64,000 bases of DNA from Octopus sinensis (lineage: Eukaryota). Below the pieces are notes generated by a model. That model saw only the letters and a program-made list of their open reading frames with translations. It ran no database searches and was not told the origin of the DNA. Within the stretch, counting starts at the first letter, position 1, and each line of letters begins with the position of its first letter. Made by a program: the position numbers and the translations under genes. Where the stretch lies: NCBI RefSeq assembly GCF_006345805.1, contig NC_042998.1, positions 138,074,001-138,138,000 of the forward strand, read 5' to 3'. This document shows positions 1 to 62,492 of this stretch, in pieces.

Positions 1-199
1 TATGTGTGTGTGTATGTGCTGCTGCAACTTGTCTATCTTACTCTCTCCGTCACTCTGTACGTGGACCGTCCCTTCTGTTTATGCTACTTTGTGTGAGCGT
101 GCGCTAACGCGTGCGTGTATGGGAGTGTGCGCGCATGGGAGTGTTCGTACATGCGAGAGTGCGTGCATGGGAATATGCGCGCCTGTGTATTTCTGTTTA

Positions 200-3085
<2,886 letters not shown>

Positions 3086-3602
3086 AACAGATAGATAGAG
3101 GGATAGAGATACACAGAGTGAGAGAGTGTGTAACAGAGAGAAAAGTGAGAAAATTCTAACGAAAGAGATGGAAAGAAAAAGGTAGAGAAGCATAACATAA
3201 GTAAAAGAGAGTCACATGCATGCTTACAGTGATGCACATACACATATAGGTAGGTAGTTAGCTAGCTAGCTAGAAAGATAGATAGATAGAGTGCTTGAAG
3301 GTAGTAAATAAGGTTGCCCTCAGAGTTGCTAATGTTATATTCGTTATATTCATATTAATTTTTGTTTTTGACAAAAATTGCCAACTTGCAAAATTGACTG
3401 CTGCTATTGCTGCTACTGCCACCACCACCACTACTACCACAAGCTGTCAAAGATCAGTAATGCGATTTATCACGTCAAGGCATTTGAAACGCCAGCAGTG
3501 CAAATGAAGAGAGCTTGTCATCAGGAATAATACAGCGGAAGATGTAAAAACTCTCGAAGGTTTGGGTGTTTATGGAGTATACGAAAAGGATACGGCATGC
3601 TG

Positions 3603-3636
<34 letters not shown>

Positions 3637-5799
3637 ACTGGAGTGATAGATATAGATTGTGGAGTGAAGATGTTAGGTATTCGGCGACTGTTGAATGTGG
3701 CCGCTTCAATATAGAAATCTTTGAGATAACAGGTAGCAAAGAATACATGTATAACGATTTCCTTTTAATTCAGGATAAAAAAGAGTGTTTGGATTGGAGA
3801 GGAACTACAGGTAACTGAATTTAATCCTGTTTATTATAGGTATGCATTGTCCAAATTTCAGTCAATTAAATCCTTGGAATTAGAAATAACGCTAATTTTA
3901 CCAGAGCAGGAGACACAGCTGACTAAACTGATTCCAGTATATTTTTTGACTGATTCTAATGACTTAAAGGCAAAGGTTTAAAGGCAAAGTTGATTCCATG
4001 GTATTTGATCATGGAAGCGAAAATGTTAAGAAGAAATATAGTAATACATTTACTAAGTAAATGTATTACTCTTTAGCTAGTATTATTGTTTATTTTTAAC
4101 GAAATTAATAATCCTTTCTCCTACAGGCACAACGCTTGACATTTTATGGGAGGAAGCTTGTCAGTTACGTCGATCCCAGTACTCGACTGGTTCTTATTTT
4201 ATCGACCTCAAAAGATAAAAGGTAAAGGAATTTCAACTCAGAACGTAAAGACAGATAAAATACTACTTAAGGTTAATAGTTATTTCTGATTTAGGTGCAA
4301 TTTTAAAGAGTAAGGGTTAGTAGATCTCATCGACTCTTGTACTATATTTTATCGACCCCGGAAGAATAGAAGGCAAAGTTGACTGCGGCGGAATTTGAAC
4401 TCTGAACGTAAAGTGTAGGAAACAATAGTGCAAGGTATTTTGTCCGATGTGCTAACGATCCTGCCTGATTGCCGCCTTGCATAAGGTCAGTAATGGTTTC
4501 TAATCTGTGTACAAGACCAGCAATTTTGAGGGGAGTACTTCATTTGTACTTTATTTTATCTATACCGGACTTCAGTACTTGGCTTGTACTTTATTTTATC
4601 TATCCTGGAAGAATGAAAAGCAAAATTAATCTTCTCTGAATGTATAGAGTCAGATGAAAAACGGTAAGACATGTCCGGCGTTCTAAACGGTTCTGCCAGC
4701 TCGTCAAACCTCACATAAGGTCAATGATTTAGGGCTAAGATACCAACCCATAGGATAATCAGGAGAGCCAGTGACTTTCATGTCGTTTCGAGGAGTATTA
4801 GACAGAAAATAATATCACAACCGAAGATCAAAACCGATTGCAGACTTATTGTGACTAAAACTAATTTTAATTTATGCTTTCGCTATTACTTCCACATTAT
4901 CACAACCATTATCGTCAATGTTATTATGGCAGGCGAGCTGGCAGAGTTGTGAGAGCTTCGGAAAAAATTCCTTGAGGTATTTGTTCTAACAATGCCAATA
5001 GATATCATTATTACTGTCTCTAAGGTGGCGAGAATCGTTAGTACGTCGAAGCACTGGGTGGGGGGCGATGTAATCGACTAGCCCCCACATTTCAGGCCTT
5101 GTACCTAAATTACAAACAACTATAACTTTCTCCAATAAAGAGGAACATATAAATTAATTAAAAAAACAAAACAAAAATTTTCTTTTTGCTGCATAGGCAT
5201 CCAGTACGTCACTTCTTTAACTGAATTAGTAAGGCATTGTTCCCTGCCAAAAGAAACCCCAAAAGAAACCTAAGTTTAGGAATATACAAGGTGTAAATAA
5301 ACGCAAACAAATAAATACTGGATAGATTTACTACAGTAAAATCACATACACTTACACACACCGTACACGTATTATTTGTCTTGTTTGTGGCTGAAGTTTA
5401 AACAAAACCAACAAAGCGACTTATAGCTTATGTGGCTTTGGAGAAAAGTGTTGGTCGGTTGGAAATCTCTTCTGAAATAGCAACTTCCAGTGTATACGTG
5501 ACCTCACACTATTTGAGAATATAAAACAGGTGTGTCCTTTGAGACATGGACGTTAAGAATTACAAGAGAAGACGTCAACACCAAACGGAACGCTATTGTT
5601 TCCAGTGAATTATTTAGCATTTTTTGAAGAACTTGCGTCTATCTTTCATAGTTGTTATCAGTGTCCAGGAGAAAAGTTGAACCAATTTCCCCAGAGGATC
5701 ATTGTTATTGTTGTTGCTGGTGCCACTTTTTTGTTGTAGTCTATATTGTTGTTTATTTTGCTGCTGTTGATGCAGTACACGGATTAATGATGGTTTAGT

Positions 5800-6290
5800 T
5801 AGTCCTTCCTACTCATTTTTAAACACCGTTCAGCATTTTCCCTCCATTGCTCTCGATTAGCTGCGTGCTCATCTGTAATTTTAAAGTGTTTATTGACAGC
5901 CTTCAGGTCTTCCTAAAAGGTGTGATACCATACAGCTCACGGTCTTCCCTATCTTCCCCTTCATCATGTTGGTGCCCATATAAATGCTGTTTTTTTTTTG
6001 CACACCTATGACCTGACAGCAGTAGGACATGACTTGTCAATTGACTCTTCGTTTCGATGATGTATATCAGGCTCTTCGCGAAGACACCCTCCTTGAGGCA
6101 TCTTTGTTTCTGATATGATGATGACACGAAATTCCCAGGATTTTTCTGAAGCATCTTTGGTGAAAGACATCAAAGTTTTAGTTGATTTTACGCAGTTTTT
6201 TCTCCATATTTTATCTTCATGCGGCACCATTGATAGTACAATGGTATTGTGCAGGCTGAACATAGTGTTGGTATTCAATATATTTAGGGA
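5800..6290 (-). mobile_element. RTE-clade LINE 3' fragment (decayed)
   Basis: Manual minus-strand translation gives DVFHQRCFRKILGIS..HIRN and AFIWAP..RGR*GRP..WYHTF*EDLKAVN, matching the post-RT C-terminus of RTE LINEs, with stops and frameshifts. Confidence 0.75.
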
Positions 6291-9126
6291 TAAAACTGTA
6301 TATTTGTTGAAATACTGCTTCGAGATTTTGTATTAATCATGATAACACTATTTTGATAAGAAATTATTGTGTAAAAACTATTTCAATATAATAAAAGATT
6401 TGTTAAAAAGAAGCACTTTTGAAGTAAAATATATTCTTCAAACTATTCTCTATTTTAACAGATGGTATATTGGTGTGCAACAACAACTGCAAGAACAAGA
6501 TCTAGAATAACAATATCATTCCGGGAATTGACCCCACATTCATTATGATCCTGAGTCAAACACCATAATCACTTCACACAAGAAATCTATTTAAGACTGT
6601 ATCCGATCTTTTACACAAATGTGTTAATGGAAACAAAAAATGTTGATACAACTATTATTTTACCCTAGACTTTGATTTGTGAAGAGTAAGTTAAATGGCA
6701 ACATTTTTTCTCTCCCTGTATTTTAAGATATATATATTTATTGCAGACATATTCAAATGTGTTTAAACAAATACAGGCATATACGGACATAGGCAATAAA
6801 TTATGTTCTATAAAAAAACTTGATTTAGTTTTTAATTTAAGCACAGAGCAAGCAGTTTTGAAGGGAGAGGTCTGTCGATATTATCGGCCACAGTTCTCGC
6901 TTAATATCCCGAAAGGATGAAAAGCGAAGTTGATCCCAACGGGATAATGAATTGAAGTTACAAAGTGTAAATGGGTTCTGTATCAGTCACAGAAGCGAAA
7001 GGACTTTTGATAAGTAATTAGTTATATCTTCATAAGAATTGGAGTGTTATTAAGTCAAGGCATTTAATAGTACTTGTCTTGATTTGGTAAGGGCATCGTC
7101 TTCAATAAAAACAATTTCTGCATCATTAATGTCACATGAAAAGTGACCCATGACGTTAAACTAATTCAGTATTGAAGATTTGTTTATTACGTATCTCCAT
7201 GTCCGGTCCGAGCCTTCTTTTCAGATGACACACTTGTAGAATGCAATATCTCCAGCCTCATTAGTATAATTAATAAATCCCTATACCTAAACAATTGGGA
7301 CTTATAACGGTTTTTTGAGTCGTTCTCAAAATTATGATAGTTGAAAGCAAACAAACTATATTTAAACAGCATTTTAGCTGTACTAGATAATGATTGTACA
7401 TTGGGTCATGGGATGGGTGCGCAGACAATGAAATTGATACCAATAATTTAAGGAGTATTTACTTTACTGAACACAGAAAGATAAAAATTCAAATTCGAAC
7501 CCGGTGAGAAAAATTCAGTGAGAAATTCAGTAATAAATACAGTGAGAAAAAGGCTTAAAGCTAGACTTCTTATTCACCGCTCTACCAATTCTGCCTCTTG
7601 GTTGCCGTCATGCACTATATATATTCTAATCATTTTATGATATTTACGATTAGAAGGTAGTATTTGGAATAATGTCTTACAGTTTTAACTGGGGGCATAC
7701 CCTGACCAGATTTCTGTGGTGCGCTTTTTTCTGTATTTTTCTCCGTTATGTATTCCAGCTCAAAGGCTATGGCCATACTGGGAAACCCGCATTTAAATAC
7801 ATTTCTGCCTTGTTGGGTTTTGCCAGTAGCAAGTGCCCACAGACAACTGCATGGTAAGGTAAAATTCGTTGCTACTGATATAGGAAAATAGGGATTGAAA
7901 AATCACTGATGATGCAATTAACCGCCCTGCTGAATAAAAATTCCTTATATGCAACAGAAGCAATATTAAATTAAAATATTCATCTGTGATTCATTCTTAA
8001 CACAGAAACATCGTGAAAGGCAATTAACTGCGGTATTCGTTCGGAGATACGCATTATGTACAGATAGTGTTTTAAAAAGCAAAACTATATCAATAACAGA
8101 CGAAAGTAATTCAGCAATGGCTGGGAGACTGCTACATATACATTCCTGCTGGGTTGGGCTTTGTCAGTAGCATGTACCCATTGCCAGCTGCTATATAGGA
8201 TACGACACATTCAGAATCTCACTATGAGAGAAAATACTTTACATAATTAGATATGTGAATGCTAACGAGTATTAATTACTTTAATGTTTCACTGCATTCA
8301 CTTTACATGTTGCTGCATCATATATATCACAAACAATAATTTACAAAATTTAATAATTACACGCTTGTGATTAATAATCGTGCTAATTTTTCTGAACTGA
8401 TATGAACATTCATTCATTGATATATATTTCCAGTGCACTTTTCATATTTGTCGTCTGTAAGTATTGATCTAATTTCATCGCCACCCTTCTTGCCAGCATG
8501 CTGAGGGATACATTGGCGTTGTGAACTAAAGATTTGTTTAACAAGAAGCTCACTTGCCAAAGTTTCGAAGCCATAAATAAGTGGAAAAAAATAGCAATTT
8601 CACAAAGAGGATCGTCAGTAAAAATGGGGTATTAGCGAGCTAAGAGAGTCTAGAAACCATGCACTCAATACATTTGGTAGGATTTACAATTATTTTTAAT
8701 AACCGTTTGACTTAAAGTTTTGTGCGCGAGCAGGATGCTTTCATATCAGATGCTAGGAACAAAGTGATGTGGAGATGAGTTAAGCTTCTATTAATATATT
8801 ATATATAGATATATTTCATCCTTTCGATAAAATAAGTATCAGTTGAGTACTGGGGTGGATGTAATCGACTTATCCTATCCCCAAACTTTCTGGCATTGTA
8901 CCAAAGTTTAAAACCAAAACTGACATACGCACACACGCACACACACCTTACAATCGACCAGTGAGAATGAGTGCTCAACACCGCATAGGTGGATAAAACA
9001 GTCTTTGTTTGTGGGATAACCAGACAAATACTGGCGTCACGTTGAAAGAGATATCTCTCTCAATATGAAACCAATGGTAGTCTGGTTATCTCACGAATAA
9101 TATATATATATACATATATATGGGGG

Positions 9127-9175
<49 letters not shown>

Positions 9176-9260
9176 ATACAAACACACACTTACATACCCG
9201 CTCATATGTACCTGTATGTATTATGTATTAATAATATAAGAAAAAAATGTTTCTACTTAC

Positions 9261-9682
9261 CTGTACGCGTGACTCAGTTAAACCAATTCTGAGAGCCAAT
9301 TCTTCTCGCATAAAAATGTCTGGGTAGTGAGTTTTAGCGAAACTGCGCTCAAGTTCGTTCAACTGGGCAGGCGTGAAACGTGTTCTGTGTCGTTTTTGTT
9401 TGACAGTTTTGTCCAGATCTTGGCCGTTGTTTCCGCCTCCTCCGTTACCATTACCGGTACCGCCATTAAGTGAAGACTGATGCTGTTCTGAACTGGTTCG
9501 TCCATTATTGATGACTGAAGACTTCAGCTGGTTTTCTTCTTTCTCTTTGAGCGGGGCACCACCAAGGAGTTCATGACCCGGATCGCGGATACCTGGAACA
9601 GTAGAGAGTAATTCACACAGGACGGTTGAGGGAACATCCAGTCTTTTACTGGGGTGCTGGTCGATAGAAATACGGCTCACAT
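9261..9682 (-). CDS. Otp: Orthopedia homeobox gene, internal coding exon (N-terminal region, Gly/Asn-rich linker, homeodomain residues 1-46)
   Basis: Translation contains [47 protein letters not shown], the Otp homeodomain as I know it from other bilaterians (homeobox part 9261-9398). Acceptor tttttattgtAG ends at 9683; donor CAG|GTAAGT at 9261/9260 is the classic PRD-class intron between residues 46 and 47. The exon is 422 nt and starts in phase 1. Confidence 0.97.
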
Positions 9683-10934
9683 CTACAATAAAAATGGAAA
9701 TTAAAAAAAAAATGGTTTGTCTGTATATGTGTTTTATTAAGTTAACTATCAGGAAACCAACTCCCAGATGTCATTTTAGATTTATGAATTTCTCCCTTTA
9801 TTTCCCATTAACTATTTGATGTTGTCAGCCAAAACACCAAAGGATGAAAAAAAAAATTATATGAACCAGAACGTAAACTGAAAAGTACAGATAACCATGT
9901 ACTGAGAAGTTATTTATGTTTTACGCTTCAACTAGTATATTTCTAATAGTTTAGTTTTTATTATCTCTAAATGCATGCTTGGCGGCAATCCGGCAAATAT
10001 GCCAGATACAATGTTTGGCGCCTTTCGTCCGTCTTTACCTTCTGATTTCAAATTTCGCCATGGTCGACTTTGCCTCTCATCTTTTTGGAGTCAATGTAGC
10101 CGACTAGCCCAGTGGGTGGGGATGTCAATGTAATCGATTAGCCCACCCGCCGAAAAGTTCACGCCTTGTGCCGTGGTAAAAAGGATTATCTCTTAGTGTA
10201 CATAAAAAGCGTAGTCGTCATTCCTAAGGGCGTATGACATGGCAACATGTGGCATGCTTTCGTCAATTGTTTTAAGTATCTGTGTAGTTACGAGCAAATG
10301 TAGACATCACCGTCAACCCCCACCCCCACATTTAACCAAGCGGAACATTGAAATGTAAAAGGCGGAGGGAGAGAGAACTGAATCAATACTTGGCTGGTTG
10401 GTAGTAATTTTCAGCTGAGAAGACAGAAATCACGTGAAATAAAATGCCTTGTTCAAGAAGACACCGTGCCACCCGGTCCACGAATCGAAGCCACATCCTT
10501 ATGATCGTGAGCCCAATGCACAGACCACGAGGCCATGCTACTTCGCACCCAGTCATATCTATTGGTATACTTTATTTGCAGGTAAATTATACATATTAAT
10601 AGCCTTGCGTAGGTAACGAAATGCATAAACGCCTTATGCTAAAAATTATGTTATATAATGTAGTGTGTATATATATATATATGCATACAATAAAATAGCA
10701 TGTATGTAAGTGTGTGTGTGTGTGTGTTTCTAAATGTTTGTTTACGTGCGTTTAGGGATATGACAAAGTTAAAGAGAATTTACAAAATGATACAAAATTC
10801 AAATATTTAGGGAAATTAATGTTTTACTCTCATTTTCATCTATCATATTTTTTCCTCAAAATTCCACAATTTCTACGGGCATTATTTTCATTATTTACAT
10901 TTGACGGATATTTTACCTCCTCTTGTTTATTGTT

Positions 10935-10980
10935 AACACAACGTTTCGGCTGATATACCGTCCAGCCTTCATCAGGTATT
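10935..10980 (-). ncRNA. Minimal type I hammerhead ribozyme, intact core
   Basis: Minus strand reads AAUAC CUGAUGA A GGCUG gacgguauau CAGCC GAAAC GUU GUGUU. Helix I has 5 bp (one G-U) and helix II 5 bp with one unpaired A after the core. Helix III is reduced to the palindrome AACGUU. The NUH triplet is GUU. Confidence 0.8.
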
Positions 10981-11420
10981 CAAGAGTAATACAACACTTC
11001 GCAAATATCTCCTTCGTGTAAAACCACCAATAGAAGAGAATATGATGAAAGACAGCGTGAACTCCATCCCATGCAGCTGTGGTAGGTTATACAAAGGCAA
11101 AATATGCCGCCCCCTCAAAATAACGGAAGACGAACATCGCAAAGCTGTGACACGAGGAGATATTGATAAATCGGGTATAGCTGATCATTTATGGGTAAAT
11201 GGAGACCACCTTCCCCTGTGGGATGAAGTTAAAATAATAGACAGAAAACACCACTGGAAATACGAAAGCTAAAAGAAGCAGCACATATGCTAGGACACAA
11301 CAACCGCCTAAGCAGACCAAATGCAGATATGAGTAGCATATGAGAACCGGTATCAAGAAGGATAAGAAAATGTTAGATTTATAAGCCCTAAAATTCACTC
11401 CATAATTGCCCACGAGTATC

Positions 11421-11475
11421 TGGCGTAGTAGTTAAGAGCGCAGGCTACTAACCCCAAGATTCCGAGTTCGATTCC
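11421..11475 (+). mobile_element. tRNA-derived (Pol III A/B box) cassette inside the Penelope-like element
   Basis: TGGCGTAGTAGTTAAG (A-box-like) and GAGTTCGATTCC (B-box-like) with tRNA spacing; no complete acceptor stem. Confidence 0.65.
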
Positions 11476-11953
11476 TCAATAATAACTGTAATAATAACAT
11501 CGAAAAATACCTTAGGAATGAGAACCCAGGTTTGAAATTTCCGCAACACACCTGATGAAGGCTGGAGGGTACATCCCCAAGACACCAAACAACAAACAAG
11601 TTGAGGAAAAATATCCGTCAAATGTAAATAATGTATATACTTCCTCAAGTCTTAAATATAGAACTATTTTCTACGGGCATATATAGTATGTTTGAGACAC
11701 ACAGACACATAATAAACAGTTGAAGACAACTGATGCGAAACTTCGAAGTCATTGTAACAGGTTATATATTTATGCATGTATACATATCATTCATACAAAT
11801 ATACATACATACATGCATGCATAAGATCAACAGATGAGACTATGAACATTTTATCTAAAAAATCAGGAGAGTTAAAAATACTGATATTATTATGAAAACA
11901 TGGATAGCATTACAGTGGATTTACTGTATATTCTCAATCACCTTGTATGTACT

Positions 11954-12920: not shown

Positions 12921-13400
12921 ACGAGTCTGATCAATAAGTATCCGGACTGTTGCCATAGCAACGAAGCTAAATCACGTAGAGTGAAGCTTCTTGGCAAAGA
13001 TTGACCTTGAGCTCTACTTTGCATGCGCACTAAGTTTTAACGTTCTAGCTCACTTCTGATGTTTACAGCTGTGCTCGGAAGGAAGGTGTATAGCATGTGA
13101 TCGTGGCAGTGACCATGACAGAGAAAGTTGTCATGGAGATACCAGCTCAGAAGCCTACGCAAAGTTGCAGAAAGTGTATAGAGATGAGTGTATGGGCCGC
13201 ACACAAGTGTACGAGTGTTTCGGACGTTTCCAAGAATGTCGAAAAAATGTCGATATTGATCACCGTTATGGAAGACCCGCAACCAGCAGAACTAAGAAAA
13301 ACATTGCAGATGTGCGTGCAGCTGTGAGGGGGAAATTGTCGAACATCATCTGTGAGCTATCAGAGGATATGCAGATTAATTACGGTTCAGTTCAGTCCAT
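12921..13400 (+). mobile_element. Mariner (Tc1/mariner) left end with transposase HTH remnant
   Basis: End sequence acgagtctgatcaataagtatccg. ORF 13165+ reads [64 protein letters not shown], a mariner N-terminal HTH, truncated at (TA)n. Same family as the elements at 60804-62389. Confidence 0.88.
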
Positions 13401-13455
13401 TATATATATATCATATATATTTTACATATATATATATGTATATATATGTGTGTAA

Positions 13456-24059: not shown

Positions 24060-30060
<6,001 letters not shown>

Positions 30061-30092: not shown

Positions 30093-30460
30093 ATAGGCAC
30101 AAGGCCTGAAATTTTGGGGAAAGAGATTAATCGGTTGCATCGACCCCAGTGTTTCATTGATACTTAATTTATCGGCCTCGAGAGGCAAAGTCGGCGGAAT
30201 TTAACTCAGAACGTAGAGGCAGGCAGATGAAATACCTATTTCTTTGCTACCCAGAAGGGGCTAAACACAGAGAGGACAAACAAGGACAGACAAACGGATT
30301 AAATCGATTATATCGACCCCGGTGCGTAACTGGTACTTATTTAATCGACCCCGAAATGATGAAAGACAAAGTCGACCTCGGCGGAATTTGAACTCATAAC
30401 GTAGCGGCAGACGAAAAGCATTTCGTCCTCCGCGCTAACGATTCTGTCAGCTCGCAGCCT
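30093..30460 (-). mobile_element. SINE family A (tRNA-derived), near full-length
   Basis: Minus-strand head gagctgacagaatcgttagc..gagttcaaattcc (A/B boxes) and body with the ggcaaagtcgacctcggcggaatttgaac and cgat..aatcgac motifs. Many degenerate copies at ~4130-5110, 8830-8920, 9985-10190, 15400-16260, 20880-21050, 32560-32760, 41230-41430, 41980-42320, 43260-43460, 44870-45060 and 53860-54390. Confidence 0.85.
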
Positions 30461-31922: not shown

Positions 31923-33176
31923 CATACACACATACAATACATACATATACACATGCTACATCATGTATATACACCTACATAATGGACTCTTCCATCAATT
32001 GTTTTTACATTTAATTTGACGTAAAAACAAACTCTAATATAAATATATCTATTTATGTGCGCGTGTATATGTATAGATGCATGTCTATCTTTGTGCATAA
32101 TAACATGCCACATGATAAACCACTGGAATGTATTACATAATTTTACAGTTCCATTAATGACATTTAATGGCAAGTGTTTAATTAATATATTTATGCATAA
32201 ATATATTAATGAAGCGTGTGGCACATGCGCGTGCCTGAAAACAAATGCATAAAGCAGATGCGTATTTAACTAGTCCGTGAGTAAATAAATGGAAAGTATG
32301 TGATAAGCGAACATATCTAGTGCATCAATGCTAAAAATTATATTCAACTATAATAAGCACATAATCAATCATTCAATAATTGCCTCTCTGGGAATCGAAC
32401 TATAGATTTTTACCAATCTGATATTACCCCCGCCTCTATTTTGCTACCGATATGATTGTAGACATTTCGATATCAGTAATATTTCTACGTAATAAATATC
32501 AAGTTAAATCGTATGTTATATATTTGTTATATTTGAATACAAAATAGTAATATTAGTTTCAACTTTTGACACAAAGCCAGTTATATCGGGGGAGGGTGGA
32601 AAGCCGATTACAACGATCCCCTTCCTCATTGCTCAACTGGTCCCGAAAGGATGAAAGGCAAAGTCAACCTCAGTAAAATTTGAAATCATAACGTAAAGAC
32701 GGACGAAATGCTGCTAAGCATTTTGCTAACGATTATGCTAACCATTCAGCCAGCCCACCACCTTATATAATCCGCGTGAAATTATTCACATTCATATCTC
32801 TAATACACAAGCAAGCACATATATCATTGCATAATATGTATATAATACGTATATATATAAATGCGATATAATCATATATATATATATGTATGTGTGTGTG
32901 TGTGTGTGTGTTGTGTGTGTGTGTGTGTTTGTGTGTGTGTATGTGTGTGTGTGTGTAAATGTAATATGTGACAATTATTCGGTAGCCAGGATAAAACTCC
33001 GAGTTTTTCCGATGGCCAGATAACTGAAGAGATGACGGCGTGGATTTCCACCTCGGCATGCGAAACTCGGAGTTTTATCATAGCTACCAAATAATTGTCA
33101 CATATTACATTTACAGATATATTCCTCTATTTACATATATCGAGGTCTTTCATTCTTTGTTGTCTTACCATTTTTA

Positions 33177-42404: not shown

Positions 42405-42780
42405 ATTCTAAGCACAACGCTCGAAATTTTAGGGGATGGGACCTGTCGATTAGATCGACTTCAGTACACAGCTGGTACTTTTTTTATCGACCCCGAAAGG
42501 ATGAAAGGCAAAGTCGACCTCGGCGGAATTTGAATTCAGAACATAAAGACAGACGAAATATCTATTTCTTTATTACCCACAAGGGGCTAAGCATAGAGGG
42601 GACAAACAAGGACAGACATAGGTATTAAGTCGATTACATCGACCCCATTGCGTAACTGGTACTTATTTAATCGACCTCGAAAGGATGAAAGGCAAAGTCG
42701 ACTTCGGTGGAATTTGAACTCAGAACGTAGCGGCAGACGAAATACCGCTAAGCATTTCGCCCGGCGTGCTAACGTTTCTG
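42405..42780 (-). mobile_element. SINE family A, near full-length
   Basis: High similarity to 30093-30460, including the internal repeated tcgaccccgaaaggatgaaaggcaaagtcgacctcggcggaatttg unit. Confidence 0.85.
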
Positions 42781-47580: not shown

Positions 47581-49105
47581 TCACTTGCTATTCATGGACG
47601 ACCTGAAGCTATTCACAAAAAAACAAGCAAAACTGGACAGCCTAGTCCAATCTGTGCGGATTTTCTCCAATGATACTAAGATAGAGTTTGGACTCTCAAA
47701 ATGTGCTAAGGTGTTGATGAAACGAAGAAAGCTTGCCAGGATAGAAGTCTTATGGCTACCAAGTGGTGAAATGATGAAGACAATTCAATCTCAATCCAGC
47801 TAAAAAAATACCTGTTAATACTTGAGGCAAATGAAGGAAAAGACAAAAAGAGTACTTGCGGCGAGTGGGAAAAATATTGACTTCAAAGCTGAATGGCAGA
47901 AACATAATTTCGGCAATAAACTCGCGCACAGTCGCAGTAGTTTGTTATGACGCTGGAATCCTGAAGTGGACAGAGGAGGAGCTAAAGGAGATGGACAGGA
48001 AGTCAAGAAAGCTCCTAGCGATGCATGGAGCACGTCATCCACGTTCAGACACTGATCGCCTATACATGAAGAGAGAAAATGGAGGAAAGAAGGGAACTGA
48101 TAAGTGTGGAAGACTGCATGCATATCGAACTCGAGAGCTTAATGAGATACCTAACCCAAAGTAAGGAAACCTTGTTAGTGTCATGAACGAAGAAGCATTG
48201 AGAGCAGAGAAAAAAGTGAAAACAAAGGAAGAAGTAGAAAAAGGACATGAAGAAGAATTATGCAAGAAGGGACTACATAATCAATTCCATGTATCTACAA
48301 CAGAAGTTGCTGGAAAAAATAAGTGGGGATGGTTGATGAAAGGAACACTAAAAAACGAAACCGAGAGCATTATACTGGCAGCGCAGGACCAAGCTCTGGC
48401 CACGAACAGGAAGGTCAACCTGAGGAATGAGCAATTGTCTCCGCTGTGTCGCATCTGCAATACAGTGGATGAAACCGTTGCCCATATCACGAACGAATGC
48501 CCTAGACTTGCCCCAAACCACTACATGTTGTAGCGACTCAACCAGGTAGTGAAAGTGCTACGATGGAAACAGCGAAAAGTGGGGGATAGAGAGAAGCAAG
48601 ACGTGGTATGAGGACACAACGCAGCGCAGAGAGTGGCGGATTCGGAGACTAGCAAAATCTGCTGGGATTTCGCAATCCAAACAGATCAGGCGCTAGAGCA
48701 TAACAGACCGGACCTAATGGTGGACATGGCACACCACATATGCTATATAGTTGACGTTGCATGCCCTTTTGACCCACGAATAGTCAAGAAGGAAAATGGA
48801 AAAGTAGATAGATGCAACCCTCTTAAGTATGAAATTGCCCGGCTATAAAAAATGAAGAAGGTGAAAATAGTGTCAATTATTGTTGGGTCCTTGGGAACAG
48901 TATCAGAATGCATCAAGAGGAAACAAGAATGGAGTGGCCAGTAGAACTGTTACAAAAGGTTTGCCTCCTTAGTACGGCCAGAATACTCAGGAAAGTATTA
49001 GATAGCTGAAAAGAACGAATAGCATGGTACCGTAGGCTGCAGGTAGCAAGCCCACTACGCATGCAAGACTCCAGGAGCTCCAACAAAACATGTAATAAAG
49101 AGAAA
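47581..49105 (+). mobile_element. RLE-type LINE 3' part: RT end, CCHC knuckle, RLE and 3' UTR, flanked by (AAT/AAC)n and (TAA)n
   Basis: HLLFMDDLKLF, CRICNTVDETVAHITNEC (CCHC), WDFAIQTDQALEHNRPDL..VDVACPFD (RLE) and AATAAA near 49094; frameshifted. Confidence 0.92.
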
Positions 49106-59361: not shown

Positions 59362-59703
59362 GGGGGTAAAGACCCCCTTCGGTCAGGCACTGACCATGGG
59401 TTTGCACCTAGAGAGATACCCTCTGAGGCACAAGTCTGGGCAAGGTTGTTTTATGGAAGACCAGCAGTCGCCCATGCATACCGGCCTCCCCTCTCCACGT
59501 CACCGATGTTGTCCAAGGGAAAGGCAAGGGCCGATACAGCTTGGGACCTGTGACGTCGCAACTCATTTCTACAGCTGAGTGAACTGGAGCAACGTGAAAT
59601 AAAGTGCCTTGCTCAAGAACACAACACGCAGCCCCGTCTGGGATTCGAGCTCACAACCTCACGATCGTAAGCTCGACGCTCTAACCACTGAGCCATGCGC
59701 CTT
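59357..59703 (-). mobile_element. SINE family C (tRNA-derived head)
   Basis: Head GGCGCATGGCTCAGTGGTTAGAGCG..GAGCTCGAATCCC followed by a cttgagcaaggcactttatttcacgttgctccag body; degenerate copies at ~27040-27245 and ~35770-36070. Confidence 0.82.
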
Positions 59704-59733
59704 CTCATATATATATATATATATATATATATG

Positions 59734-60803: not shown

Positions 60804-61554
60804 CGTGGTAAATCAATAAATATTCGGGCTGTAACTATAGTAACGAAGCTAAAGCACGCAGAGTAAATCCGCTTGACACAGATTGATCTTGAACTTTGCT
60901 GTGCATGCGCATTAAGTTGTACCGTTCTAGCTCACTTCTGTGCTTGGAAGGTGTGTAGCGTGTGATCGTTGCATTGACCGTGACAGAGAAGTTGAGCAAA
61001 GAATCTGCGTTAAATTTTGCCAAAAGCTTGGCGATACCTGCTCAGAGGTCCACGCAAAGATTTCAAAAAAGTTTTCATTGTTTTCGAGACCACCATAGAC
61101 ATCTTGTGCAACTAAAACCCGAGTGTCTTTTTGGTCAGCTGAAAGCAGTTTTTGCTACAAACTTGGCAGACGATGTCATTCTTAGTTCAACTTGTTGCGG
61201 GTCTTCCAGAGCGTTGGTCAATGTCGATATTTTTCGGCCATATTGGAAATGTCTGAACCACTCGTACACTCATGTGCGGCTCATAAACTCCTCTCCATAC
61301 ACTTTCTGCAACTTTACGTAGACCTCTGAGCAGGTATTGCCATGACAACTTTCTCTGTTATGGTCAATGCGACGATCACACGCTACACACCTTCATTCCG
61401 AGCACTGCTGTAAGCAGCGGAAATGAAGTGGAACATTAAAACTTAGTGCACATGTACAGCAGAGTTCGGGGTCAATCTTTCGCAAGGGGCTTTACTCTGC
61501 ATGGTTTAGCTTTGTTAATATGGCAACAGTTCGGATACTTATTGATCAGTCCTC

Positions 61555-61667: not shown

Positions 61668-62492
<825 letters not shown>

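What the first reader, a model, noticed from the sequence alone, without database searches (positions are those of the whole stretch)
10883..11667. Penelope-like insertion puts an intact minimal hammerhead on the Otp sense strand, ~1.25 kb before exon 2
Seen: all core nucleotides are present, with helices I and II and a palindromic AACGUU in place of helix III. The predicted cut is between 10940 and 10939, on the strand transcribed as Otp pre-mRNA. Established: PLE pLTRs carry minimal type I hammerheads that work best as dimers through palindromic helix III. Inference: the inverted pLTR placed a potentially self-cleaving RNA in a neural homeobox intron. The partner copy at 11548-11590 is broken and on the other strand, so monomer activity may be low.
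Basis: partly seen in the sequence, partly recalled or inferred. Interest (0 to 1): 0.72.

Follow-up and report, generated by a model that had tools for sequence, protein, structure and literature searches.

The report
Relic transposon hammerhead in Otp intron
A decayed Penelope-like retrotransposon fragment next to an octopus Otp homeobox exon carries one sequence-intact "minimal hammerhead" ribozyme motif on the gene's sense strand, but this is the ordinary kind of relic that these transposons leave by the thousand and it is predicted not to cut the RNA.

Summary
At 10980-10935 (minus strand) there is a complete minimal type I hammerhead. It has the CUGAUGA core, an unpaired A, a 6-bp helix II, GAAA, the palindrome ACGU in place of helix III, U17, and a 5-bp helix I. 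The predicted cut is at 10940/10939. A full descriptor hits once in the window and never in 2000 random 64-kb sequences.

The motif sits in the inverted left arm of a 785-bp, 5'-truncated Penelope-like element (10883-11667) with a perfect 13-bp target-site duplication. The element's own 3' copy, on the plus strand, is broken. The Otp homeodomain exon (9682-9261) is on the minus strand, 1258 nt downstream.

This is a textbook PLE min-HHR (Cervera & de la Peña 2014), and single copies showed no detectable cleavage in vitro. Three points argue against activity here:
- Three of the five helix I pairs come from junction sequence, not from the pLTR.
- The trans-dimer fold is less stable than two monomers.
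- On the minus-strand RNA the two arms are predicted to form a ~95-bp duplex that buries the ribozyme core.

Otp exon 1 was not found, so the intronic position is likely but unproven. Rfam finds no hammerhead. Verdict: real, ordinary, low interest.

The parts
10870..10882 (.). Left copy of the 13-bp target-site duplication TTTCTACGGGCAT
   Evidence: Perfect direct repeat with 11668-11680. It is the only direct repeat family found in 10600-11900.
10883..10977 (-). Inverted partial copy of the PLE 3' region (pLTR fragment). It runs from 2 nt 5' of the hammerhead core to about 27 nt short of the element's 3' terminus.
   Evidence: Inverted repeats I1 and I2. BLAST shows 79% identity over 95 nt to 11550-11644 and 85-90% identity to two Octopus vulgaris copies.
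10935..10980 (-). Minimal type I hammerhead motif: helix I 5 bp, CUGAUGA, unpaired A, helix II 6 bp with an 8-nt loop, GAAA, ACGU palindrome, U17. Predicted scission is between 10940 and 10939.
   Evidence: Sequence. Descriptor scan: 1 hit versus 0 in 2000 random sequences. Family alignment A2 and pair counts.
10976..10977 (.). Junction (2-nt microhomology GT) between the inverted arm and the 5'-truncated ORF
   Evidence: Arm identity ends at 10977. Nucleotide identity to the L006 ORF begins at 10976.
10979..11370 (+). 5'-truncated, decayed C-terminal ORF of the PLE (endonuclease-type region, 'SIPCSCGRLYKG...EDEH...'). It has a frameshift near 11254-11260 and an internal stop.
   Evidence: Translation. 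tblastn of L006 EN ORF and P0121. 83-84% identity to P0121 and to Octopus vulgaris P0122. Profile search returned 555 relatives.
11371..11549 (+). PLE 3' untranslated region between the ORF and the hammerhead region
   Evidence: 85% identity to O. vulgaris copy L001 3068-3640 across ORF plus UTR.
11550..11667 (+). The element's own 3' pLTR region with the broken hammerhead (CUGAUGA at 11552-11558; helix II 3' strand, G12, ACGU and helix I 3' strand lost) and the 3' terminus
   Evidence: Alignment A2, row win_right_plus. Terminus is homologous to the L002/L004 ends.
11668..11680 (.). Right copy of the 13-bp target-site duplication
9261..9682 (-). Otp (orthopedia) internal coding exon holding homeodomain residues up to ...ESRVQ. 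An alternative acceptor is possible at 9592/9591.
   Evidence: tblastn 96% identity to the Otp homeodomain. Sequence with ag| acceptor and |gtaagt donor. 744 homologues, and the named ones are orthopedia.

Best explanation
10883-11667 is an old, dead, 5'-truncated insertion of a cephalopod Penelope-like retrotransposon. The element is oriented antisense to Otp. As is usual for this class, integration produced a variable-length target-site duplication (here 13 bp) and an inverted partial copy of the element's 3' region at its 5' end.

The family's 3' region carries a minimal type I hammerhead. The element's own copy has decayed. The inverted copy has by chance kept every conserved position, so it lies on the Otp-coding strand.

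In the living element the motif presumably helps process PLE transcripts. This is inferred from the literature, where the function is still unclear. In this copy it is a molecular fossil for four reasons:
- It has no helix III and no same-strand partner with which to form a double hammerhead.
- Only 2 of its 5 helix I pairs are native.
- The trans-dimer fold is not favoured.
- On a minus-strand transcript the antisense of the right arm is made first and is predicted to pair with the left arm into a ~95-bp imperfect duplex that buries C3-A9 and helix II.

The expected effect on Otp RNA by self-cleavage is nil or negligible.

Shown: the anatomy, family membership, strand, distance to the exon, and folding predictions. 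Inferred: that the site is intronic, that there is no cleavage, and the ancestral role of the motif.
For: - **Insertion anatomy:** TSD and inverted arms.
- **ORF remnant:** homologous to Octopus vulgaris and many ENA cephalopod-like ORFs.
- **Longer relative L006:** has the order RT pieces (RVT_1 32 bits, cut-off 29.6), then the EN-type ORF, then the 3' UTR, then a hammerhead at 6020. It also has an inverted hammerhead arm upstream at 3265.
- **Same hammerhead in seven other family copies:** helix II pair 24-40 appears as C-G x4, U-A x3 and U.G x1. Pair 25-39 appears as G-C x6 and A-U x1. 77.6% of cells are paired, against <=46% when partners are slid.
- **Descriptor scan:** 1 hit versus 0 in 2000 random windows.
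- **Junction:** mapped to 10976-10977.
- **Folding of the motif:** 66-nt monomer MFE -11.4 kcal/mol, z -0.69. The double-hammerhead dimer is -19.9 versus -22.8 for two monomers.
- **Folding of the whole element:** the minus-strand RNA has MFE -245 kcal/mol, z -5.3, with the arms paired in both the MFE and centroid structures. The arm-arm duplex is -113 versus -42 kcal/mol for the arms apart.
[quoted passage not shown] They occur in thousands per genome, often as opposite-strand pairs 100-700 bp apart. A single motif gave no detectable cleavage, and dimers gave low cleavage.
- **PMC8557442:** an inverted 5'-truncated copy is typical of PLE insertions.
- **PMC11167929:** the anole PLE HHR is protein-assisted, and no cleaved ends were seen in RNA-seq.
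Against: - No experiment or RNA data were available. Folding energies are predictions and ignore co-transcriptional kinetics and proteins.
- The motif kept both CpGs and all core bases while its partner lost them. This could hint at constraint, but with one locus it is equally a coin toss.
- Pfam does not recognise the ORF as GIY-YIG, and there was no PDB sequence match. The endonuclease assignment therefore rests on motif resemblance and on its position after an RT.
- Covariation support is modest. With 9 sequences, 51 of 500 shuffles reach the observed score.
Confidence: 0.85

Rival explanations
1. The sense-strand min-HHR does cut a fraction of Otp pre-mRNA in vivo. Cleavage would be helped by PLE-encoded protein, RNA chaperones, or pairing through ACGU with other family transcripts. 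This would dampen or time Otp expression.
For: - All core positions, G10.1-C11.1, helix II and a 5-bp helix I are present on the coding strand.
- An anole PLE HHR cleaves when its ORF protein is present (PMC11167929).
- The family is abundant, with 555 ORF relatives, so partner RNAs could exist.
Against: - A single min-HHR gave no detectable activity, and dimers were weak and mostly at non-physiological Mg2+ (PMC4209133).
- No cleaved ends were found in anole RNA-seq (PMC11167929).
- The double-hammerhead is less stable than two monomers.
- The core is predicted to be buried in a -113 kcal/mol duplex.
- Helix I is partly non-native.
- There is no second same-strand copy in 64 kb.
Confidence: 0.04
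2. The relevant feature is not the ribozyme but the inverted repeat. In a minus-strand (or plus-strand) transcript the ~95-nt arms, 572 nt apart, form a long imperfect dsRNA hairpin. This could be an ADAR editing or dsRNA-processing substrate in cephalopod neurons, or could influence intron folding.
For: - The arms are 79-92% complementary.
- The MFE and centroid structures of the 811-nt minus-strand RNA both pair them, with z -5.3.
- Duplex gain is about -70 kcal/mol.
- That cephalopod neural tissue edits dsRNA heavily is established knowledge. It was not tested here.
Against: This is prediction only, with no editing or expression data. Such inverted PLE arms are common (PMC4209133, PMC8557442), so any effect would be generic. 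The reading depends on the region being transcribed.
Confidence: 0.1
3. The element lies upstream of the Otp transcription start (or between Otp and an unrelated upstream exon), so the motif is never part of Otp pre-mRNA.
For: Exon 1 could not be found by homology anywhere in the window. Only 1.2 kb separates the element from the exon.
Against: - The exon has a polypyrimidine-AG acceptor, no in-frame ATG, and an in-frame stop at 9773-9771, so at least one upstream coding exon is needed (and my reading of it).
- The 9774-10882 gap holds SINE-like repeats.
- The gap has no ATG-initiated phase-1 exon with a >=7/9 donor.
- The other Otp intron exceeds 9.2 kb, so long introns are the rule here.
Confidence: 0.12
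4. The hammerhead-like motif is a chance arrangement unrelated to ribozymes.
For: The bare CTGATGA...GAAAC pattern is expected 0.19 times per window. Rfam finds nothing.
Against: - The full descriptor gave 0 hits in 2000 random windows.
- The same motif sits at the same place in O. vulgaris and ENA family copies, with compensatory helix II changes.
- It matches every non-imposed trait listed for PLE min-HHRs (PMC4209133).
Confidence: 0.01

Closest known systems
Minimal hammerheads (min-HHR) in the pLTRs of metazoan Penelope-like elements (Cervera & de la Peña 2014, PMC4209133)
   Same: Same core, an unpaired nucleotide between A9 and G10.1, G10.1-C11.1, a 6-bp helix II, a 4-5 bp helix I, no helix III with a palindromic 15.2-16.2, location in the PLE terminal repeat, and frequent opposite-strand pairs a few hundred bp apart in truncated copies.
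   Different: Nothing of kind. This is a cephalopod family copy. Its helix I 5' strand is partly replaced by junction sequence, and its cleavage triplet is GUU.
Canonical EN+ PLE insertions (Penelope/Poseidon/Neptune-type) with an inverted 5'-truncated copy (Craig et al. 2021, PMC8557442)
   Same: C-terminal EN-type ORF after an RT (seen in relative L006), a 3' region reused as an inverted arm at the 5' end, a TSD, and an HHR near the 3' end.
   Different: Only the last ~130 codons survive here. The clade within PLEs was not determined.
Intronic, sense-strand hammerheads of amniotes (Rfam HH9/HH10; De la Peña & García-Robles 2010, cited in PMC4209133)
   Same: A type I hammerhead on the sense strand of a host gene intron.
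   Different: Those have a real helix III, loop-loop tertiary contacts, efficient monomeric cleavage and deep conservation. This motif has none of these and does not score against the Rfam models.
Animal non-LTR retrozymes / newt and Schistosoma satellite hammerheads
   Same: Type I hammerheads with weak or absent helix III that act as tandem dimers. They are related to PLE pLTRs (bioRxiv 10.64898/2026.07.22.740005). About 43% of Xenopus copies are intronic.
   Different: Those are tandem same-strand repeats that can form double hammerheads. Here there is a single copy with an inverted, broken partner.

Membership tests
PLE minimal hammerhead (min-HHR) | Catalytic boxes C3-U4-G5-A6-N7-G8-A9 and G12-A13-A14, with A15.1 ... 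U16.1-H17 | tested here: met
   CUGAUGA 10975-10969, GAAA 10947-10944, U16.1 10941, U17 10940.
PLE minimal hammerhead (min-HHR) | One unpaired nucleotide between A9 and G10.1, and a G10.1-C11.1 pair | tested here: met
   A at 10968; G 10967 pairs with C 10948. The same holds in 7 other family copies.
PLE minimal hammerhead (min-HHR) | Long helix II (about 6-8 bp) and short helix I (4-5 bp) | tested here: met
   Helix II GGCUGG/UCAGCC is 6 bp. Helix I AAUAC/GUGUU is 5 bp. Only C-G and A-U next to the core are native; the other three pairs use ORF-antisense sequence.
PLE minimal hammerhead (min-HHR) | No helix III; 15.2-16.2 palindromic, so that two copies can build helix III | tested here: met
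   A15.1-C-G-U16.1 = ACGU with no loop.
PLE minimal hammerhead (min-HHR) | Sits in the terminal repeat of a Penelope-like element | tested here: met
   It lies in the inverted copy of the 3' region of an element whose relatives have RT, then EN ORF, then HHR.
PLE minimal hammerhead (min-HHR) | Self-cleavage (as dimer) | not testable with these tools
   Folding only: the dimer fold is -19.9 versus -22.8 kcal/mol for two monomers.
Rfam hammerhead families (Hammerhead_1, HH9, HH10 and others) | Score against the covariance model | tested here: not met
   No hammerhead match at gathering score, or at E<=10 in 1.3 kb or in 86 nt. This is expected for a motif without helix III.
Penelope-like element, EN+ canonical | Reverse transcriptase followed by a C-terminal GIY-YIG endonuclease in one ORF | tested here: inconclusive
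   The window copy lacks the RT (it is 5'-truncated). Relative L006 has an RVT_1 piece (32 bits, E 1.3e-07) just upstream of the homologous ORF. No Pfam GIY-YIG hit for any member and no PDB hit. The 'VYxIPCxCG..YxGET.R....R..EH' pattern resembles PLE endonucleases from memory only.
Penelope-like element, EN+ canonical | pLTR/inverted 5' copy architecture and a target-site duplication | tested here: met
   95-nt inverted arms and a perfect 13-bp TSD. The same inverted-arm layout is seen in L001, L004 and L006.
Conserved intronic host hammerhead (HH9/HH10-like) | Stable helix III, tertiary loop contacts, and orthologous conservation | tested here: not met
   No helix III and no Rfam match. Orthologous conservation could not be tested.

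The most novel reading that the evidence does not exclude
A transposon-derived minimal hammerhead on the sense strand of the first Otp intron is cleaved in octopus neurons. Cleavage would be assisted by PLE protein or by pairing with other family transcripts. This would give a retroelement-dependent brake on a conserved neuroendocrine homeobox gene.
Probability: 0.03. Interest if true: 0.55.

Novelty: new member of a known kind. Interest (0 to 1): 0.12.

Why it matters
It matters little. It adds a cephalopod example to a class described in 2014 that is present in thousands of copies per genome, many of them intronic.

Two modest points are useful. First, it shows how a truncated inverted PLE arm can leave a sequence-complete ribozyme motif on a host gene's sense strand. 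Second, such motifs are invisible to Rfam models, so genome annotations will miss them.

If sense-strand intronic copies were ever shown to cleave, Otp would be one of many affected genes.

Tried and rejected
- **Rfam scans:** whole window at gathering score, and 1.3 kb and 86 nt at E<=10. No hammerhead was found. The only hits were low-complexity miRNA-like and CRISPR-DR noise.
- **Pfam on the ORF remnant and six relatives:** no GIY-YIG. PDB sequence search gave nothing.
- **Otp exon 1 and exon 3:** searched by tblastn with vertebrate and spider N-termini, the C-terminal homeodomain part and the OAR motif. Only noise came back, and exon 3 is not in the window. N-termini of 18 other Otp predictions share no motif usable for a search. 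A heuristic scan for ATG-initiated phase-1 exons found none in 9774-10882. No octopus Otp protein is in the protein collection.
- **A second upstream hammerhead:** a 19-nt match (TTCAATACCCGGTGAAGGC in L002/L004) first suggested one, with 'UUGAAUAC' as a native flank. Reading those loci showed no ribozyme there, so this was rejected as chance.
- **ORF homology running under the hammerhead:** a tblastn extension to 10958 suggested this, but nucleotide comparison shows it starts only at 10976.
- **tRNA-like look of 11416-11480:** not supported by ARAGORN or Rfam.
- **Other copies of the element in the window:** none.
Full report
**What is in the sequence**

The minus strand between 10990 and 10925 reads UUGAAUAC-CUGAUGA-A-GGCUGG-ACGGUAUA-UCAGCC-GAAA-CG-UU|GUGUUAACA. 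In hammerhead numbering the parts are as follows:
- C3-A9 at 10975-10969.
- One unpaired A at 10968.
- A 6-bp helix II (10967-10962 with 10953-10948), starting with G10.1-C11.1 and closed by an 8-nt loop.
- G12-A14 at 10947-10945.
- A15.1-C15.2-G16.2-U16.1 at 10944-10941. This is the self-complementary ACGU with no loop, so there is no helix III.
- U17 at 10940.
- A 5-bp helix I (10980-10976 with 10939-10935).

**Is it more than chance?**

The loose pattern CTGATGA-N8-38-GAAAC alone is not rare, with 0.19 expected per window. I then scanned with a full descriptor requiring the core, 0-1 inserted base, helix II >=4 bp, GAAA-NN-U-H and helix I >=4 bp. It gave this one hit in the window and none in 2000 random 64-kb sequences on both strands.

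Rfam 15 does not see the motif at all. This holds at gathering score and at E<=10 in 1.3 kb or in 86 nt. That is expected, because the Rfam hammerhead models include a helix III.

**The element around it**

- A perfect 13-bp direct repeat, TTTCTACGGGCAT, flanks 10883-11667 (10870-10882 and 11668-11680).
- Inside, the two ends are inverted repeats of about 95 nt (79% identity by BLAST).
- On the plus strand, 10979-11260 and, after a frameshift, up to about 11370 encode a decayed protein tail, '...TLRKYLLRVKPP...SIPCSCGRLYKG...EDEHRKAV...'.
- That tail is 83-84% identical to an Octopus vulgaris hypothetical protein and to an ENA ORF. A profile of it finds 555 relatives, almost all from one ENA assembly that looks cephalopod-like.

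A longer relative (locus L006) shows the full layout of the family:
- ORF pieces with 'GLPKIHK...PLRPIVS' and 'YVDD', one of which passes Pfam RVT_1 (32 bits, cut-off 29.6).
- Then the homologous C-terminal ORF.
- Then a 3' UTR of about 350 nt.
- Then a hammerhead at 6020.
- Upstream, an inverted hammerhead-bearing arm at 3265.

The window element is therefore a 5'-truncated Penelope-like element on the plus strand, antisense to Otp. Its own 3' region is at 11550-11667, and an inverted partial copy of that region is at 10883-10977. Craig et al. 2021 describe exactly this inverted 5'-truncated arrangement as typical (PMC8557442).

Pfam does not call the ORF GIY-YIG, and there is no PDB sequence match. 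The endonuclease label therefore rests on position and on a motif resemblance I recall, not on a test.

**The hammerhead is the family's**

Seven other copies carry the same motif at the same place. Two are in O. vulgaris L001, and the others are in L002, L004 (two) and L006 (two). In the nine-row alignment A2:
- The core is invariant.
- N7 varies (U or A).
- Helix II pair 24-40 appears as C-G (4), U-A (3) and U.G (1).
- Helix II pair 25-39 appears as G-C (6), A-U (1) and G.U (1).
- 77.6% of cells pair, against at most 46% when the partners are slid.

With so few sequences the shuffle control is not striking (51 of 500 shuffles reach the observed score). I therefore lean on the agreement with the literature.

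The window's plus-strand copy (11552-11590) keeps CUGAUGA-A-GGCUGG. It has lost the helix II 3' strand, G12, ACGU and the helix I 3' strand.

The canonical family helix I 5' strand is (G)ACAC. In the window copy, identity to the other arm ends at 10977, and nucleotide identity to the ORF of L006 begins at 10976. The junction is therefore a 2-nt microhomology.

Only the two pairs next to the core are native. The other three (U.G, A-U, A-U) are supplied by antisense codons of the truncated ORF. 'Intact' is thus partly luck.

**Will it cut?**

Cervera & de la Peña 2014 (PMC4209133) defined this class and listed the traits found here:
- G10.1-C11.1.
- Palindromic 15.2-16.2.
- A long helix II and a 4-5 bp helix I.
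- Thousands of copies per genome.
- Many single copies, or opposite-strand pairs 100-700 bp apart, from truncated PLEs.

They report no detectable cleavage for a single motif and only low cleavage for dimers, mostly at non-physiological Mg2+. A 2024 study of an anole PLE found its hammerhead to be protein-assisted and found no RNA-seq ends at the cut site (PMC11167929).

My folding results point the same way:
- The 66-nt monomer is not unusually stable (-11.4 kcal/mol, z -0.69). Its MFE pairs core bases with ACGU.
- The double-hammerhead dimer scores -19.9 kcal/mol against -22.8 for two separate monomers.
- No second same-strand copy exists in the 64 kb.
- In the 811-nt minus-strand RNA the two arms pair in both the MFE and the centroid structure (-245 kcal/mol, z -5.3).
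- The arm-arm duplex is worth -113 kcal/mol against -42 for the arms apart. The complementary strand is transcribed first.

The ribozyme core would therefore be buried. These are predictions, not measurements.

**The Otp context**

- An exon on the minus strand, 9682-9261, has a polypyrimidine-AG acceptor and a gtaagt donor. A second possible acceptor is at 9592/9591. The exon encodes the Otp homeodomain up to ...ESRVQ, and its named homologues are orthopedia.
- The cut site is 1258 nt upstream of the exon on the coding strand.
- The exon has no in-frame ATG, and there is an in-frame stop at 9773-9771. An upstream coding exon must therefore exist.
- I could not find that exon by homology.
- The 1.1-kb gap holds SINE-like repeats and no plausible ATG-initiated phase-1 exon.
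- The other intron is longer than 9.2 kb, because the WFQNRRAKW exon is not in the window.

An intronic position is therefore likely (about 85%) but not shown.

**Comparison and verdict**

This is a member of a known kind, a PLE min-HHR in a truncated, inverted-arm insertion. Intronic hammerhead-bearing copies are commonplace; about 43% of Xenopus retrozyme copies are intronic (bioRxiv 10.64898/2026.07.22.740005).

It is not like the conserved intronic HH9/HH10 ribozymes, which have a helix III and tertiary contacts. The only readings that would make it interesting are in vivo cleavage of Otp pre-mRNA, or an effect of the dsRNA hairpin. Neither is excluded, but neither has support. Interest is low.

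Noticed in passing
window 10976-10977: The inverted arm and the truncated ORF join at a 2-nt microhomology (GT) right at the 5' edge of the hammerhead. In L004 the inverted arm is also truncated at the CUGAAGA box, which hints that arm formation tends to stop near the ribozyme.
   Followed up: partly
window 11416-11480 (+); L006 5805-5900: A stretch in the PLE 3' UTR looks tRNA-like by eye (GGTTCGATTCC-type box), and a similar-looking stretch sits at the same relative place in L006. ARAGORN and Rfam (E<=10) find no tRNA.
   Followed up: yes
window 1-9260: The third Otp exon (WFQNRRAKWKKRKK... and OAR motif) is not in the window, so the intron after 9261 exceeds 9.2 kb.
   Followed up: partly
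window 10010-10095 and 10432-10547: SINE-like repeats lie between the PLE and the Otp exon. Other copies are at 30344-30419, 32643-32722, 42486-42558, 42680-42742 and 59592-59707.
   Followed up: partly
window 60962-61321 and 61796-62155: Two identical 119-aa ORFs lie 834 bp apart on the plus strand. This indicates a recent tandem duplication or an assembly artefact.
   Followed up: no
window 26232-26331: A run of 100 N (assembly gap) inside an extremely AT-rich microsatellite region (GC 16-25% in 24-30 kb).
   Followed up: no
window 47856-48533 (+) and 13165-13455 (+): ORF fragments that look like other transposable elements: a LINE-type C-terminal zinc-knuckle '...CRICNTVDETVAHITNECP...', and a mariner/HTH-like N-terminus. 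Not analysed.
   Followed up: no
window 11761-11834: Sub-threshold Rfam matches to mir-297/mir-466/mir-4012 (best 42.5 bits versus gathering 90) fall on TA/CA-rich palindromic low-complexity sequence just outside the element. I treated them as noise.
   Followed up: partly
L003 9549 (-): A different min-HHR family in the ENA cephalopod-like assembly: CUGAGGA-A-GUCUUU...AAAGAC-GAAA-UA-UC. It has the same architecture (extra A, 6-bp helix II, palindromic UA), which shows that several PLE hammerhead families coexist.
   Followed up: no
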